Shown one piece after another: positions 4,837-9,931 of a stretch of 64,000 nt of DNA; the stretch's first letter is position 1; every line of letters starts with the position of its first letter. A program made the position numbers and the translations under genes. The stretch is from NCBI GenBank assembly GCA_002269645.1, contig NIVC01000284.1, forward strand, positions 1 to 64,000, given 5' to 3'. This DNA comes from Macrostomum lignano (taxonomy: Eukaryota). The notes below the pieces were generated by a model. That model saw only the letters and a list, made by a program, of their open reading frames with translations, was not told where the DNA came from and did no database searches.

Positions 4837-7538
4837 ATGAACATTAAAGACTTAAATGAAGTTGAATGTCACACAAAATGGTTTGCCAAGTTTGACATCA
4901 TTGAAGAACGTGTCAAGAAAGTTTTAGACGACCTTGAATCGGAAAAGTCTGACTCACCATGGCTGTCAGATCTCTACCTGCTCTTGAAAGCTAATCTCCG
5001 GACAATGCCGATGTTCTGTGATTTAGGCAAAGCGTGGAAGTTGTTAAGTGAAACAGAAAGGGAAGTTCCAGCATTGATTAACGTACAGTTTCTGGTCAAA
5101 GCAACAAAACTTAGGCTTATGGAGATGGAATCGAGACCGGGAAGTCCATCAGGACAAACGTATGACGAGGCAAAGCAATATTTAGAGGACTTCTCGGCTC
5201 ATGAGCTAACAAAAGCAACTTGCTTGGTTGTCAAATGCTGGACAATGCGATGGTTCGCCGTCGGGCCCCATAGGAAAGCCATAATAAAGGACTGTGAATA
5301 TGCTCTTCAAGATGCCAAACAGATTCTGGACACTACGAAAAAGATTCCTGAAAATCCAGAGTCCCAGGCCGTTAAGTTTTTATGCCTGTACAACTCGCAT
5401 TGGTTCTCAATGAACAGCGAAATGAAAAACTTTTCATTTGTCGTGAAGAGCTCCAGCATTGGGAAGAGGCCAAGAGTATATTGGATGAACAGAAGTGGCA
5501 AGATGTGATGTTTCTAGCCGATTTTGCGAGGGCAGTCGCTTCAACACCGACGCATTCGAAATTATGTAAAAATCTGTTAAAAGCTACAGAGGATTGGACA
5601 GAAACTACAAGGACAAACAGAACAGATGGCAATGAAAACAGGTCAAAACCGTATCGAATGTACATCGCGTTGCCAGAAGTTTATTCGACTCTGATCAGAC
5701 GTCTGAACAGAATGGGAAAGGACAAAAATGAAGTTGAGACTTTTAGCGAAAAGATCAGAAGCATACTTGAACAGGGCAACGAAATCGAAAAATGTAGAAA
5801 TCACCCTTCCTTCATTGCTGCAAAGGTAGGACAATTTCTATTTGATTCACGAGTAAATGAAGCAGAAGACCTACTAAACGAGAGTATTTTCGGAAATGAA
5901 TACTGGTTAGAATTGAAACGAATTCAAGTGCTACTCAGGAAGCCGAAAGAAGATGTCGACATTCAATCAAGTCTCCGTCTATTCGAGACGCTCTGCACCA
6001 ACTTTCCGAACAAAGAAGCGATTATCCGAATGGACAAGGGCATTTTTCTTTTGAAGCACGGTGATGTCAAGAGAGGTATGGAAAATCTCATCTGGGCCAA
6101 TAACGACTATTTGCATCCTGCCTATAGAAACAATGGGTTTATAATGCAATATCTAAGAGAAATCCAAGCTGCAGTAGCAGAAGAAGAACATTATCTGATT
6201 TGGATTGAAAGTCAGTTTGAAACTGATTCGGAAACATATCACGTAGGAAAGTCAATAAAAAAGTACCAGAACTACCAGCCATTGTCCGATGAGCAGAAGC
6301 ACTTTGTCAACGAGCACCTCGGCCGGCTGCTGATGCGTAAGTCGCAGTTCGAAGAGGCCGAGCAGCTGTTCCGCTCACTGCCTGAGTCCGTGCAGCACAG
6401 AACTGCAATGATCGCTGACTCTCTCCTCTGCCAAGCGGAGAGCTTGTCGAGCGGAGATGACGTCAAAGAGGTGTGCAAGGACAAGCTAGCCAAGATGCAA
6501 GCGGAGAGCTTGTCGAGCGGAGATGACGTCAACGAGGTGTGCAAGGACAAGCTAGCCAAGATGCAAGCGGAGAGCTTGTCGAGCGGAGATGACGTCAACG
6601 AGGTGTGGAAGGACAAGCTACCCAATAAAATGCGGCTGCACCTGCTAAACGAGTGCGCCTCACTCGGCTGCAAGGACTCCGTACACGAGGCACTGCTGCT
6701 GCTGGAAGAAGACATTCGGAAACAGAGCGACAGAAACAACGTGTTGCAAGTGAATGCGGACCCCTTGTTCCTGCACAGCACATGCGTCTATGAGTTTTGC
6801 GCCCGACTGACTGAGCTGAAGAACGCCGGCTTTCACATCAAACGACGTCGCACAGCTCCTGAAGATGAAGAAGGCATAACAGAGAAAATGTCCGACCTGC
6901 TGAAGAAGGTGAAGGAAATTCTATGTCAGCAATCCTACCCAAGGAAGCTAAGGTTAAAAATGACTAGATTGATTCTAAAAGAATCACAAGAAAAAGACGT
7001 CTACTGGCGCAGTATGTGGCTCACACTGGATGAGCTTAGAAAAGAACTGGATAGAATTTGGCACGACTTCATTGCAGCGGCTCGAAATAACCCCATAAAT
7101 AAAAAGGTAGATGTTAGTTGTTGGAAATGTCCTGTTTATTATCCGCTAACCCATGACCAGAGAAATGCAAATACAAGTGCTGAGAAGGCTCTTGAGGGTA
7201 AATGGAAATTGAGTTATAATAAAAAAGAGAATAGAAAGTTTGACGACAATCCTGATGTGCAGTTTCCTCTTGCACCAAGAAGCACTCATTACATTTTTAA
7301 ATGGATGGCTCAGAAGGAGACAGCGATTGGGGAAAACGGAAACTGGCTAGAGCTTTGGAGCAGTAAAATCAACCAAGACAAACATAAAACTGCTGTTGAA
7401 CTGAGAAAATTGAACTCGGATATCGAGAAAAAATTTCAAGAGTCAAATACTCGTAAAGGCCCAGCCAACTTGCAGCAGCTGGCGCACTTTGCAGCAGAGT
7501 TCGTAGAGGAGGTCAGATTCGTACTTTTGTCTTATAAG
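4837..7538 (+). CDS. Exon 1 of a composite gene: IFIT-like TPR array plus putative HEPN-like domain; one frameshift at the T5 run 5377-5381
   Basis: ORFs 4816-5508 and 5382-7547 join if one T is added at AAGTTTTTATG. The N-terminus LNEVECHTKW..ERVKKVLDDLE resembles the IFIT CHFTW start. TPR-like helices include HLGRLLMRKSQFEEAEQLF. The exon ends in a phase-0 donor AAG|GTAAGT at 7538/7539. Confidence 0.7.
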
Positions 7539-7872
7539 GTAAGTTAGACCGATGAGCAATTGATTTCCTGAATATATTCCCACGAAGCCTACTATTTTAT
7601 CCTAGGCTAGTAGACTAGTGGACTAAGGATCACTTACATCTACTATGAAATATCCATCTAGAAATCTTGTCTACAAACCAGCTCTTGAGAATCTAACTGA
7701 TTGTGCAGGTTTGCTAGTTTGTGCAAAGTCCTCCAAACATCTGTTCTGTCCTTTTATTCCTTAGCATCCCGGCCTGTGTTTCGCACTTAATTCGCGCTAG
7801 TAAAAACATCTCACACTCATCCTGAGGAGAGTTTTCGAACTCCCAATGCACTAATTTATCCATTTGTTTCAG

Positions 7873-8527
7873 TACAAAGAAGTCAGCGGCTTTCCAATGA
7901 AGTTCGAAGCCTTGAAGTCCGACTATGATTGGAAATGGGCCTGCTACAAATGCGCTACTGGGTTCGATGCACTTCGCAGCAGATTCGAAGAGCCTTCAGA
8001 ACAATGCACGGACTGTCAGCAGGTCATTCTGCTGGTTCGTGACAAAAACGCTGTCAGTGGCAGCAAGTGGCAGCACATCAGGCCCAGACGCCGAAAGCTG
8101 ATCAAGCTTGAAATGTGCTTCAAGTACAGCGACATTCCTGACTGCAACGAATGCATGCGCGCCCACTGCGACTCCGCGCATGGCGAGGCTGAATACCGGC
8201 TGTGGGAACTGGAGAGGATCGGCAAGTTCTCTTTCAACAGATTCATGAAGCAGCATCGCAATGCTCAAACGGAGCTGCCTCTGGTCATCTGCGAAAGGGC
8301 TGGCGAGAGCGGTGTGAGACAGATATTTTACACTGGCCCTCCTGGCCCTCCAGAAACTCAAACTCTTGCTAGACTGCCTCCCACTGAGACTAAGAATAAC
8401 CGGTTTGCAAGGCTGTGTGAAAAATTCTCTCGAGGCATACCCTGTCCTTTTTGGCGAGATGGAAAATGCTACTACGCCCACTGCGCCGAGGAGGAACAAC
8501 TGTGGAACATTATGAAAAAACCAAGAG
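7873..8527 (+). CDS. Exon 2: ZC3H7/RoXaN-type module 1 (CxxC..CxxC plus two CCCH-type fingers)
   Basis: Acceptor TTTCAG|TAC (phase 0) and donor AGAG|GTAAGG (phase 1). WKWACYKC..CTDC..ILLVR..KWQHIRPR..C..AHGEAEYRLWELER and CPFWRDGKCYYAHCAEEEQLW match the ZC3H7 pattern ACxxC..ILL..WxxIRPR..C..FAxxxEExxxWxxER as recalled. Confidence 0.8.
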
Positions 8528-8649
8528 GTAAGGGCAGTTTCAGGATTGAGAGCAACCTTGGGAATCAACTGGTGGTCCCATCAGCTAGGCTTGGCTGAGC
8601 TGGAAGGTGCTCATGATCATAGTTACCCCATCACTAATAAATATTTCAG

Positions 8650-9285
8650 AAGACTGGCCAGCTGGACTGAGAGAGCTTATCGACAAGATTAAGCCTGGAT
8701 TGACTGGTTGGATCCTGCAGTTTCATTGTGACTGGAAGCTGGTCTGCTACAAGTGCGCCAATTCGAGTGATGCACTGCAGAGCAAGTTCTCAATGAATGC
8801 GGCTACAACCGAATGTAAGAACTGTGAGCAGTGCTTCCTTTTGGTCAGAGAGAAGAGCAGCGCAGTCAGCAATGAGTGGCAGCGAGTCCGACTCAAAATG
8901 CGGAATCTGAGTAAGTGCCATAATTATGGACGGCGTGGAGAATGCAGGTACTCAGACTGCGACTTTGCCCACGGAGATTTGGAGCTGAAGATGTGGCAAC
9001 TGGAGAGGACCCAAAAGTTCTCATTCGACCAGTTTCTAAAAGACAATCGCACAGCTGCGTCAGAACTGCCGCTGATTCTCCGCGAGCTGCCAGCAGGCTC
9101 TGCGAGTCGCATTGTGTACGCGGGCCCAGAGCAACGGCCCGCTAGACTACCGCCACCAAAATGCAACAAGGCCCAGCTTTGTAAAAGTATTTTTGAAAAA
9201 GAGGATTGCCGCTACAGAAATAATTGCAATTTTGCTCATTGTGCCGAGGAGGAGCAGTTGTGGAACATCATGAAAAGTCGCGGAG
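8650..9285 (+). CDS. Exon 3: ZC3H7/RoXaN-type module 2, a tandem duplicate of exon 2
   Basis: Acceptor ATTTCAG|AA (phase 1) and donor GGAG|GTAAAT (phase 1). WKLVCYKC..CKNC..LLVR..WQRVR..CRYSDCDFAHGDLELKMWQLER..CRYRNNCNFAHCAEEEQLWNIMK. Confidence 0.82.
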
Positions 9286-9626
9286 GTAAATTCCTGGTCT
9301 TCATTTGATCCTTCAAATTTGTAACTAAAAACTAAAGTACTTAGCAAAAGATTGGTTCGAGTACTGGCTCGACAGCATATCCCTTCAGATGTCCCACGGT
9401 TTGCAGTAATTATCCGATGGTTGGGTTTCGGATTTGTCTTGACTGGGGACGTTGCTAATGCCTGCAAGATACTTGAATCGAAGGGTGGGCGTAGTCTTTG
9501 TTGCCTGACTGTTTCACCAACCTACTTGGTTCAGGCTTCAGTAAATTCTGAAAAGACGAACAGACTCCGCGTGTTCTTGAGTAAATATGCAAGTAAAATT
9601 TACTAAATTTTATTCGATATTTCCAG

Positions 9627-9931
9627 ATATTCCCAGCGCTCTGCAAGCTCTTATTAAAAAACTGGAAGAAACAACTAGCAGAAACAGCGACTCCAGGCTC
9701 CAGGAGAATTGCACAGCTGGTTCGAGTTATACACGCCAGGTAGCAGCTCCGAGCCAACCCAATGCGCAGAGCTCCAATAGCGGAAGTTCTGCCAGCCAAT
9801 CCACACGGATTAAAAAAAGGGCCACAGACTGTGGAGACAAAAAAGGAGTCAAAAGGAGTCAAGAAAGACCTCAGGAGTCAAAAAAAGCTCAGAATCGGTT
9901 TCAAGCACTGTCTGACGATGCTGAAGGCTAA
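9627..9931 (+). CDS. Exon 4 (terminal, low-complexity tail) of the IFIT/HEPN/CCCH gene
   Basis: Acceptor TTTCCAG|AT (phase 1) matches the exon 3 donor. DIPSALQALIKKL echoes EDWPAGLRELIDKI at the start of exon 3. Stop TAA at 9929-9931. Confidence 0.65.

What the first reader, a model, noticed from the sequence alone, without database searches (positions are those of the whole stretch)
4837..9931. Composite IFIT-TPR + HEPN-like + ZC3H7-type CCCH gene: candidate animal RNA sensor-nuclease
Seen: four ORFs that the track lists separately are joined by canonical, phase-compatible splice sites (7538/7873, 8527/8650, 9285/9627) into one protein of about 1430 aa, given a 1-nt correction. Known: IFITs are TPR proteins that bind viral RNA 5' ends; ZC3H7B/RoXaN CCCH fingers bind RNA and interact with rotavirus NSP3; HEPN domains are RNases in RNase L, Cas13 and Abi systems. 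Inference: a single-chain sensor (TPR), effector (HEPN-like) and RNA-binding (CCCH) protein, an architecture I do not recognise from described genes. It would be a plausible invertebrate antiviral effector.
Basis: partly seen in the sequence, partly recalled or inferred. Interest (0 to 1): 0.9.

Follow-up and report, generated by a model that had tools for sequence, protein, structure and literature searches.

The report
Flatworm TPR plus zinc-finger RNA-binding gene
The four reading frames are one spliced gene of the flatworm Macrostomum lignano. It encodes a long helical-repeat protein with an IFIT-like start and two HELZ2-type zinc-finger modules, so it is probably an RNA binder, but no nuclease (HEPN) part could be found.

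Summary
Window 4837-9931 (+) is one four-exon gene with canonical GT-AG introns in compatible phases, giving 1432 aa once a single frame break near 5392-5396 is bridged. A UniProt model from Macrostomum lignano (A0A1I8ILS8) is 100% identical to the spliced product. It uses exactly the three proposed junctions.

- **TPR region:** it is real. The start (LNEVECHTKW) resembles the IFIT signature. An intact paralog (PAA92423.1) starts ELECHFTW and scores 25.9 bits against an IFIT profile, where 500 shuffles reach at most 5.4. This gene itself scores -0.8 bits, and the structure search gave only generic TPR hits.
- **Zinc-finger exons:** exons 2 and 3 are a tandem duplicate of one module, a zinc knuckle followed by two CCCH fingers. 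Its closest full-length relatives are the N-terminal finger modules of the HELZ2 helicase-exoribonuclease. ZC3H7A is among the closest solved CCCH fingers.
- **HEPN:** not supported. There is no Rx4-6H motif between residues 204 and 996, no HEPN profile hit and no fold match, although both structure models were low confidence.

The best reading is a non-catalytic RNA-binding sensor or adaptor from a family seen so far only in Macrostomum. It is not a sensor-nuclease. Whether the frame break is an assembly error or a real disabling mutation is unresolved.

The parts
4837..5394 (+). Exon 1, frame-A part (codons 1-186). It starts at ATG 4837, and residues 6-15 are LNEVECHTKW (4852-4881), a degenerate IFIT-type LxxLxCHFTW signature. 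This is the start of the TPR-like helical array.
   Evidence: Aligns colinearly with the N-terminus of paralog P0007 (MSNLEKLEELECHFTW). hhalign motif match to the IFIT profile, P 6e-4.
5392..5396 (+). Frame break, equivalent to a 1-nt deletion, that separates frame A from frame B inside exon 1.
   Evidence: Frame B stop at 5372-74 and frame A stop at 5506-08. The P0007 alignment places the switch at LYN|LAL with no length change. One tblastn HSP spans it. P0007's own locus has a single uninterrupted exon.
5394..6851 (+). Exon 1, frame-B part: the rest of the TPR-like alpha-solenoid (composite residues about 187-672).
   Evidence: The AlphaFold model is all-alpha with about 25 helices here, and pLDDT exceeds 70 only in patches. 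Foldseek gives only generic TPR proteins, best E 4e-3. Paralog P0007 passes the Pfam TPR_2 cut-off (38.6 bits against 27). PROSITE TPR_REGION appears in the name of paralog P0001.
6432..6625 (+). In-frame 66-bp tandem repeat, 2.9 copies at 97% identity, encoding 22-aa units QAESLSSGDDV(K/N)EVCKDKLAKM. The paralogs carry one copy.
6852..7538 (+). Family-specific helical middle domain (composite 673-901), the region presumably taken for 'HEPN-like'. The conserved core at 7287-7538 carries W..W...(I/V)N.(D/E)KH and AH.A(A/T)EF.EE.
   Evidence: Conserved in P0001, P0015, P0003, P0007 and P0009. No Rx4-6H motif. No Pfam or PADLOC family. AlphaFold pLDDT 44.7, helical. Foldseek best E 2.4.
7539..7872 (+). 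Intron 1 (GT-AG, phase 0, 334 nt).
   Evidence: The junction is present in P0016, P0001 and P0015.
7873..8527 (+). Exon 2: zinc-finger module 1. It holds a C-x2-C-x17-C-x2-C knuckle, then CCCH (C-x11-C-x4-C-x3-H), then a second CCCH (C-x8-C-x7-C-x3-H).
   Evidence: Homologous to modules of snail HELZ2 P0008 (phmmer E 2.3e-8; domain iE 4.6e-13). PDB profile hits: TTP 9e-7, ZC3H7A 1.8e-5, Roquin 2.5e-5.
8528..8649 (+). Intron 2 (GT-AG, phase 1, 122 nt).
   Evidence: The junction is present in P0016 and at the same place in P0015/P0002.
8650..9285 (+). Exon 3: zinc-finger module 2. It is a symmetric phase 1-1 exon and a tandem duplicate of exon 2 (45% aa identity).
9286..9626 (+). Intron 3 (GT-AG, phase 1, 341 nt).
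   Evidence: The junction is present in P0016 and P0004.
9627..9931 (+). Exon 4: a Ser/Gln-rich then Lys/Arg-rich tail of about 100 aa, ending at stop TAA 9929-9931. No domain was found. That it is disordered is my inference from its composition.
   Evidence: Identical C-terminus in P0016.

Best explanation
This is one four-exon gene of the flatworm Macrostomum lignano. It belongs to a small family so far seen only in that species.

**What the protein contains (shown)**
- About 670 aa of TPR-type helical repeats, starting with an IFIT-like signature.
- A helical domain of about 230 aa that is conserved in the family and matches nothing known.
- Two tandem copies of a zinc-finger module (a C4 or C2HC knuckle followed by two CCCH fingers) of the kind found at the N-terminus of the interferon-induced helicase-exoribonuclease HELZ2 and in ZC3H7/RoXaN.
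- A basic C-terminal tail.

**How it most likely works (inferred)**
- The protein probably binds RNA without cutting it. The CCCH/knuckle modules and the basic tail would hold single- or double-stranded RNA.
- The conserved TPR-plus-helical half would act as a clamp or docking platform. It might bind an RNA 5' end as IFITs do, or it might bind partner proteins as most TPR arrays do.
- The outcome would be sequestering, marking or recruiting factors to target RNAs. Those targets could be viral or transposon RNAs, or the worm's own mRNAs.
- Paralogs keep the same N-terminal half but carry long RGG repeats in place of the zinc modules. RGG repeats are another RNA-binding device, so this swap supports the view that the C-terminal half is an interchangeable RNA-binding part.

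No nuclease domain is detectable. In this assembly the copy has a one-base frame break at about 5392-5396. That is either a sequencing or assembly error, or a real mutation that would cut off or disable the first 186 residues.
For: - **Gene model:**, and the identical UniProt model P0016 with all three junctions.
- **Organism and paralogs:**
- **TPR:**
- **IFIT link:** P0007 scores 25.9 bits against an IFIT profile built from 102 sequences, against a maximum of 5.4 for 500 shuffles. It still scores 10.7 bits without its first 25 residues. The N-terminal motif match of this family has P 6e-4. This gene is homologous to P0007 (phmmer E 2.6e-9; tblastn E 1e-12).
- **Zinc modules:**. P0008 is a HELZ2 by Pfam (RNB, OB_HELZ2 and two helicase domains). 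The HELZ2 finger organisation and its likeness to RoXaN are described in PMC10516660.
- **RGG-tailed paralogs:** P0007 and P0009.
- **No nuclease signal:**
Against: - No RNA binding, expression or induction data were available.
- This gene's own TPR region does not score against the IFIT profile (-0.8 bits).
- Foldseek ranks IFIT1 only 43rd among generic TPR hits.
- Both AlphaFold models are low confidence, so a cryptic catalytic fold in the middle domain cannot be excluded.
- The frame break, the transposon- and satellite-rich setting, and the fact that no NCBI Mlig_3_7 model of this gene came up in the searches fit a decaying copy equally well.
- The family-invariant polar residues (N846, K849, H850, H884, E888, E891, E892) could form an active or ligand site of unknown type.
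Confidence: 0.6

Rival explanations
1. One reading: a single-chain antiviral sensor-nuclease. An IFIT-like TPR would sense viral RNA, a HEPN-like middle domain would cleave it, and the CCCH fingers would hold it.
For: The TPR and CCCH parts are real. The middle domain is helical, conserved, and has invariant His, Lys, Asn and Glu residues. Csm6 and a HEPN protein appear in the Foldseek list, but only at E 5.4 and 9.7 with probability 0.06 or less, which is noise.
Against: No R-x4-6-H motif occurs in residues 204-996. The positions 4-6 residues before the invariant H850 are K/E/E/L/S across the family, and none is R before H884. No HEPN family is hit in Pfam, even at E<=10 on six members, or in PADLOC. 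There is no significant fold match.
Confidence: 0.05
2. A fast-evolving flatworm relative of ZC3H7A/B (RoXaN). These are TPR-plus-zinc-finger proteins acting in ordinary mRNA or miRNA regulation and translation, with no special immune role.
For: The domain order is the same: TPR first, then alternating knuckle-type and CCCH fingers (ZC3H7 architecture from my own knowledge). The ZC3H7A CCCH structure 2d9m is hit at E 1.8e-5, with the longest aligned stretch of the top hits (profile positions 66-108). The HELZ2 paper notes that HELZ2 fingers resemble RoXaN.
Against: An exhaustive phmmer scan of 1.84 billion representatives with residues 1-1119 returned HELZ2-type and Macrostomum proteins. Of the hits I could identify, none was a ZC3H7 protein at E<=1e-3. 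The TPR part here is about 670 aa with an IFIT-type start plus an extra 230-aa domain, unlike the short three-repeat TPR of ZC3H7 (own knowledge). I could not fetch ZC3H7 sequences to test TPR homology directly.
Confidence: 0.15
3. This particular copy is a pseudogene or a non-functional duplicate in a polyploid, repeat-rich genome. The frame break is real and the full 1432-aa protein is never made from this locus. At most, a protein lacking the first 182 residues would start at ATG 5382.
For: One frame break lies inside exon 1 and not in a homopolymer run. Frame A terminates at 5508. The locus sits between Ty3/gypsy elements and dense minisatellites. The only deposited model (P0016) starts far downstream, and no NCBI Mlig_3_7 protein for this gene turned up. 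M. lignano is a hidden polyploid (abstract of PMC10468722).
Against: Apart from the single break, everything is intact. Frame A has 223 open codons and frame B 719, there are three canonical introns, all zinc ligands are conserved, and the protein sequence is identical in an independently produced model. Single-base indels are a common error in long-read assemblies (own knowledge).
Confidence: 0.3

Closest known systems
[quoted passage not shown]
   Same: The whole roughly 120-200-aa module is shared, in the same order and with the same conserved residues: a C-x2-C...(H/C)-x-C knuckle, an LLV...W..(I/V)R.RP linker, a CCCH finger followed by E...W.LE...F(S/N)...F, and then a further CCCH. It was found in snail HELZ2 (P0008) and in HELZ2-like fragments that I did not identify to organism. 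HELZ2 also has alternating non-CCCH and CCCH fingers (PMC10516660).
   Different: There are no helicase domains, no RNB exonuclease and no OB/CSD domains here, so it is not a HELZ2 ortholog. The first finger of each module here is C4, where the HELZ2 relatives have C2HC or C2H2-like fingers.
ZC3H7A / ZC3H7B (RoXaN)
   Same: The overall order is an N-terminal TPR followed by C-terminal CCCH and knuckle-type fingers. The CCCH finger of ZC3H7A (PDB 2d9m) matches the module profile at E 1.8e-5.
   Different: The helical-repeat region here is much longer, has an IFIT-type start and is followed by an extra conserved helical domain. I identified no ZC3H7 protein among the 14 significant hits of the exhaustive sequence scan. 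Orthology was not tested directly.
IFIT family (IFIT1, IFIT1B, IFIT5 and relatives)
   Same: It is an all-TPR solenoid of several hundred residues that begins with L-x-x-(L/V)-E-C-H-x-x-W at the same distance from the start codon. Paralog P0007 has the exact ELECHFTW of human IFIT5 and a significant colinear profile match.
   Different: This gene's own sequence does not match the IFIT profile beyond the motif. The array is longer and is fused to other domains. The RNA 5'-end pocket residues could not be mapped. IFITs have been reported only from jawed vertebrates (PMC3688568).
HEPN-domain RNases (RNase L/KEN, Cas13, Csm6, Abi-type)
   Same: The only shared feature is that the middle domain is a conserved all-helical region carrying an invariant histidine.
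   Different: There is no Rx4-6H motif, no profile match and no fold match.

Membership tests
IFIT | N-terminal signature L-x-x-L-x-C-H-F-T-W about 10-20 residues from the start | tested here: inconclusive
   This gene has LNEVECHTKW at residues 6-15, so C, H and W are kept but F-T is replaced by T-K. The hhalign local match to the IFIT profile has P 6e-4. Paralog P0007 has the exact ELECHFTW.
IFIT | Significant sequence similarity to IFIT proteins along the TPR array | tested here: not met
   Against an IFIT HMM built from 102 sequences, this gene scores -0.8 bits, within the shuffle range (maximum 7.1). Paralog P0007 scores 25.9 bits against a shuffle maximum of 5.4. hhalign of P0007 against IFIT gives P 0.004 and probability 8%. 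The link for this gene is therefore only transitive.
IFIT | IFIT-type TPR clamp fold with an RNA 5'-end pocket | tested here: inconclusive
   The AlphaFold model has mean pLDDT 50. Foldseek returns generic TPR proteins (OGT best, E 4e-3), with IFIT1 at rank 43 (E 0.056). The pocket residues cannot be mapped.
IFIT | Induction by virus, dsRNA or interferon-like signalling | not testable with these tools
   No expression data were accessible.
HEPN RNase | Catalytic R-x4-6-H motif conserved in the family | tested here: not met
   No R.{4,6}H occurs in composite residues 204-996. No conserved R lies 4-6 residues before the invariant H850 or H884.
HEPN RNase | Match to a HEPN profile (Pfam or PADLOC families) | tested here: not met
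   Searches gave no HEPN family, even at E<=10 across six family members.
HEPN RNase | Four-helix up-down HEPN fold | tested here: inconclusive
   The middle-domain model has pLDDT 44.7. The best Foldseek E is 2.4, and HEPN entries appear only at E 5-10 with probability 0.06 or less.
HELZ2/ZC3H7-type zinc-finger module | CCCH finger C-x7-12-C-x4-7-C-x3-H with all ligands present | tested here: met
   There are four CCCH fingers: C-x11-C-x4-C-x3-H and C-x8-C-x7-C-x3-H in exon 2, and C-x8-C-x4-C-x3-H and C-x8-C-x5-C-x3-H in exon 3. PDB hits are TTP 9e-7, ZC3H7A 1.8e-5 and Roquin 2.5e-5.
HELZ2/ZC3H7-type zinc-finger module | Preceding knuckle finger plus conserved linker, homologous to HELZ2 N-terminal modules | tested here: met
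   phmmer E 2.3e-8 to P0008 in a scan of 1.84 billion proteins. Module HMM domain iE 4.6e-13 and 6.9e-10 in P0008. The invariant columns are C, C, L, W, R, C, C, C, H, E, W. P0008 is a HELZ2 by Pfam.
HELZ2 (as ortholog) | Two UPF1-like helicase domains flanking an RNB exonuclease domain | tested here: not met
   No helicase or RNB domain appears in any exon, and the gene ends at 9931 with the same stop as P0016.
ZC3H7A/B (as ortholog) | Sequence homology of the TPR region and full-length colinearity with ZC3H7 | not tested
I identified no ZC3H7 protein among the 14 hits at E<=1e-3.

The most novel reading that the evidence does not exclude
The Macrostomum family could be a genuine invertebrate branch of the IFIT lineage, which is so far reported only from jawed vertebrates. 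Here it is fused in one chain to HELZ2-type zinc-finger modules, or to RGG repeats in paralogs. If so, two RNA-recognition parts of vertebrate interferon-stimulated proteins would already have worked together in a protostome, as a non-self-RNA sensor or restrictor acting against viruses or the abundant retrotransposons of this genome.
Probability: 0.2. Interest if true: 0.75.

Novelty: new variant of a known kind. Interest (0 to 1): 0.45.

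Why it matters
IFIT proteins are regarded as an invention of jawed vertebrates tied to the interferon system (PMC3688568). HELZ2 is another interferon-induced RNA-targeting protein (PMC10516660). A flatworm family that joins an IFIT-like TPR start to HELZ2-type RNA-binding fingers would suggest these parts are older than interferon. It would also suggest they were combined differently in other animals.

M. lignano allows RNAi and transgenesis (my own knowledge), so it would be a workable model for studying them.

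The 230-aa conserved middle domain has invariant polar residues and no known relative. It is a small unknown in its own right.

The correction also matters. There is no evidence for a nuclease, so the gene should not be listed as a HEPN effector.

Tried and rejected
1. **A 47-nt intron (5371-5417, GTTAAGT...AACAG, phase 0) instead of a frameshift.** Rejected. The segment it would remove (VKFLCLYN/LALVLNEQ) aligns with conserved P0007 sequence (NNFNWLYGEAFLRA), and the other introns are 122-341 nt.
2. **Programmed -1 frameshifting.** Rejected. There is no slippery heptamer at 5385-5400.
3. **Word-indexed homolog search with the composite.** It returned nothing, although identical proteins exist in the collection. 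The search with family alignment A3 found only P0001.
4. **PDB sequence searches of the N-terminal half.** Only consensus or designed TPR proteins came up, at E about 2e-3.
5. **AlphaFold of exon 1 (719 aa) and of the middle domain (229 aa), with 5-6-sequence alignments.** pLDDT was 50 and 45, so the Foldseek results are weak.
7. **PADLOC and permissive Pfam scans for HEPN or any defence domain.** Nothing was found.
8. **Paralogs inside the window.** None, apart from the exon 2/exon 3 duplication.
9. **Exact look-up of the exon-1 ORF product in public contigs.** Not on record.
10. **Literature search for invertebrate IFIT-like or IFIT-HELZ2 fusion proteins.** Nothing beyond Liu et al. 2013.

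Full report
**1. Observation**

The region is eukaryotic. Five forward ORFs lie at 4816-5508, 5382-7547, 7864-8598, 8607-9308 and 9587-9931.

| Junction | Donor | Acceptor | Phase | Intron length |
|---|---|---|---|---|
| 1 | 7538\|GTAAGT | TTTCAG\|7873 | 0 | 334 nt |
| 2 | 8527\|GTAAGG | TTTCAG\|8650 | 1 | 122 nt |
| 3 | 9285\|GTAAAT | TTCCAG\|9627 | 1 | 341 nt |

The stop codon TAA is at 9929-9931. With frames A and B of exon 1 joined, the product is 1432 aa.

**2. Independent support and organism**

A word-indexed search of 5.8 billion proteins found nothing. An exhaustive phmmer scan of 1.84 billion cluster representatives found 14 proteins. Nine of them come from the free-living flatworm Macrostomum lignano.

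One cluster member, P0016 (UniRef100_A0A1I8ILS8, 'C3H1-type domain-containing protein', 744 aa), is 100% identical to composite residues 554-691 and 827-1432. It contains the three junctions exactly as proposed. The paralog models P0001 and P0015 have junctions at the same positions.

The gene is therefore real, is one unit, and is already deposited as a partial, uncharacterised model. That model also removes an in-frame 405-nt GT-AG intron (6909-7313), which would delete conserved helices. I treat the intron-retained form as the main one.

**3. The frame break**

Frame B has a stop at 5372-5374 and frame A stops at 5506-5508, so the switch lies between them. The intact paralog P0007 (PAA92423.1) aligns colinearly across it: FNWLYGEAFLRA against FLCLYN|LALVLN, with no gap. 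A single tblastn HSP (composite 2-531, E 1e-12) spans the break.

In the NCBI Mlig_3_7 assembly, residues 1-1036 of P0007 lie in one uninterrupted exon. The break is therefore equivalent to a one-base deletion at about 5392-5396. It does not lie in a homopolymer run.

A 47-nt intron and programmed frameshifting were both considered and rejected; the reasons are given under Tried and rejected. I cannot tell whether the break is an assembly error or a real mutation.

**4. The N-terminal half (residues 1 to about 672)**

Pfam finds nothing significant in this gene (TPR_19 at E 0.045). The paralog P0007 passes the TPR_2 cut-off, and P0001 is named after a PROSITE TPR region.

AlphaFold on exon-1 frame B with a five-sequence alignment gave an all-helical model. 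Mean pLDDT was only 50. Foldseek returned only generic TPR or solenoid proteins. The best was the OGT TPR at E 4e-3, and IFIT1 ranked 43rd.

For a direct IFIT test I retrieved IFIT proteins and built a profile from 102 of them.
- P0007 residues 5-196 align colinearly with IFIT positions 12-197.
- Residues 1-560 of P0007 score 25.9 bits, against a maximum of 5.4 for 500 shuffles.
- Without its first 25 residues it still scores 10.7 bits.
- P0007 starts MSNLEKLEELECHFTW, sharing the eight residues ELECHFTW with human IFIT5.
- This gene starts MNIKDLNEVECHTKW, but its own sequence scores -0.8 bits.
- Profile-profile comparison matches only the motif (P 6e-4).
- hhalign of P0007 against IFIT is weak overall (P 0.004).

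The IFIT relationship is therefore plausible for the family and only transitive for this gene. IFITs have been reported only from jawed vertebrates (PMC3688568).

**5. The middle domain (residues 673-901)**

This region is conserved in all family members. Invariant residues include N846, K849, H850, A883, H884, E888, F889, E891 and E892.

It has no R-x4-6-H motif. None occurs anywhere between residues 204 and 996. There is no conserved arginine before either invariant histidine.

Pfam gives no hit, including a scan of six members at E<=10, and PADLOC gives none. The AlphaFold model is helical but has pLDDT 44.7. Foldseek gives nothing better than E 2.4.

The HEPN idea fails the one feature that defines HEPN RNases. 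The fold question remains open only because the models are poor.

**6. The zinc-finger exons**

Exons 2 and 3 are tandem duplicates with 45% aa identity. Exon 3 is a symmetric phase 1-1 exon.

Each exon encodes three fingers in order:
- a C-x2-C-x17-19-C-x2-C knuckle,
- a CCCH finger followed by a conserved E...W.LE...FS..F helix,
- a second CCCH finger.

An HMM of the module finds it in several other proteins:
- two copies in each close paralog (P0015, P0002);
- six copies in P0005;
- five copies in the M. lignano protein P0006;
- three copies in P0008.

P0008 is a 3172-aa snail protein with RNB, OB_HELZ2 and two UPF1-like helicase domains, which makes it a HELZ2. A 19-module alignment shows the invariant ligands.

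Against the PDB, the profile hits tristetraprolin (9e-7), ZC3H7A (1.8e-5) and Roquin (2.5e-5) through the CCCH part. The HELZ2 paper describes alternating non-CCCH and CCCH fingers at the HELZ2 N-terminus and notes their likeness to RoXaN.

'ZC3H7-type' is therefore roughly right. 'HELZ2-type' is more accurate.

**7. Family picture**

M. lignano has at least five or six related genes. Some keep the TPR-plus-helical half and the two zinc modules (this gene, P0001, P0015/P0002, P0003). Others keep the same half but end in long RGG repeats (P0007, P0009). The swap between two kinds of RNA-binding tail is my main argument that the C-terminal half binds RNA and that the conserved N-terminal half is the common functional core.

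**8. Verdict**

The structural observation is confirmed. The functional reading as a sensor-nuclease is not supported.

The best explanation is a non-catalytic RNA-binding sensor or adaptor of a family seen so far only in Macrostomum. It combines an IFIT-like TPR region with HELZ2-type fingers. A role in antiviral or anti-transposon defence is an attractive inference from the vertebrate relatives of its parts, but it is untested.

Noticed in passing
window 42-3218 (+); also 13701-15326 (-) and 15253-16816 (-): An uninterrupted 1058-aa Ty3/gypsy pol ORF (aspartyl protease, RT, RNase H, integrase) lies about 1.6 kb upstream of the gene. A second pol ORF (RNase H and integrase; 13701-15326) lies downstream on the other strand. 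The adjoining ORFs at 15253-16816 had no family hit or were not scanned.
   Followed up: partly
window about 11100-64000, e.g. 11131-11813, 20819-21831, 25448-27272, 32689-34033, 47318-49155, 52467-54534: The window is packed with more than 20 minisatellite arrays (units of 13-48 bp, each array 0.3-2 kb). These create long stop-free ORFs with no significant family hit (25146-27485, 32729-35107, 52346-54550), which should not be taken for genes.
   Followed up: partly
window 3371-3651: A 26-bp tandem repeat of 10.8 copies at 98% identity lies between the retrotransposon pol ORF and the gene's start.
   Followed up: no
window 59482-60354 (+) and 60573-61505 (+): The first ORF matches the amiloride-sensitive sodium channel family (ASC, E 1.9e-30). 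The neighbouring ORF has no hit and overlaps a 31-bp satellite at its end. This is probably part of a DEG/ENaC channel gene.
   Followed up: no
window 6432-6625: A recent in-frame 66-bp repeat of 2.9 copies lies inside the TPR region and adds two extra 22-aa units. Paralogs P0001 and P0015 have a single unit.
   Followed up: partly
window 6909-7313: The deposited UniProt model removes an in-frame 405-nt GT-AG segment inside exon 1. This is either a possible alternative 'exitron' or an annotation artefact, and it would delete conserved helices of the middle domain.
   Followed up: partly
L001 10001-13378 (M. lignano NIVC01000052.1) and proteins P0007, P0009: Paralogs of the TPR-plus-helical half carry very long RGG/GGRGRGGS repeat tails in place of zinc-finger modules. 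P0007 begins with the exact IFIT5 octapeptide ELECHFTW.
   Followed up: partly
window 4800-4836: A pyrimidine tract followed by AG (tttcctttgttgcgcactgaag) ends 6 nt before the ATG. This is a possible spliced-leader trans-splice acceptor, as used by this species (own knowledge).
   Followed up: no
tool behaviour: The word-indexed protein search returned no hit for the composite, although proteins identical over hundreds of residues (the P0004/P0016 cluster) are in the same collection. Negative results from that tool should be treated with care.
   Followed up: yes
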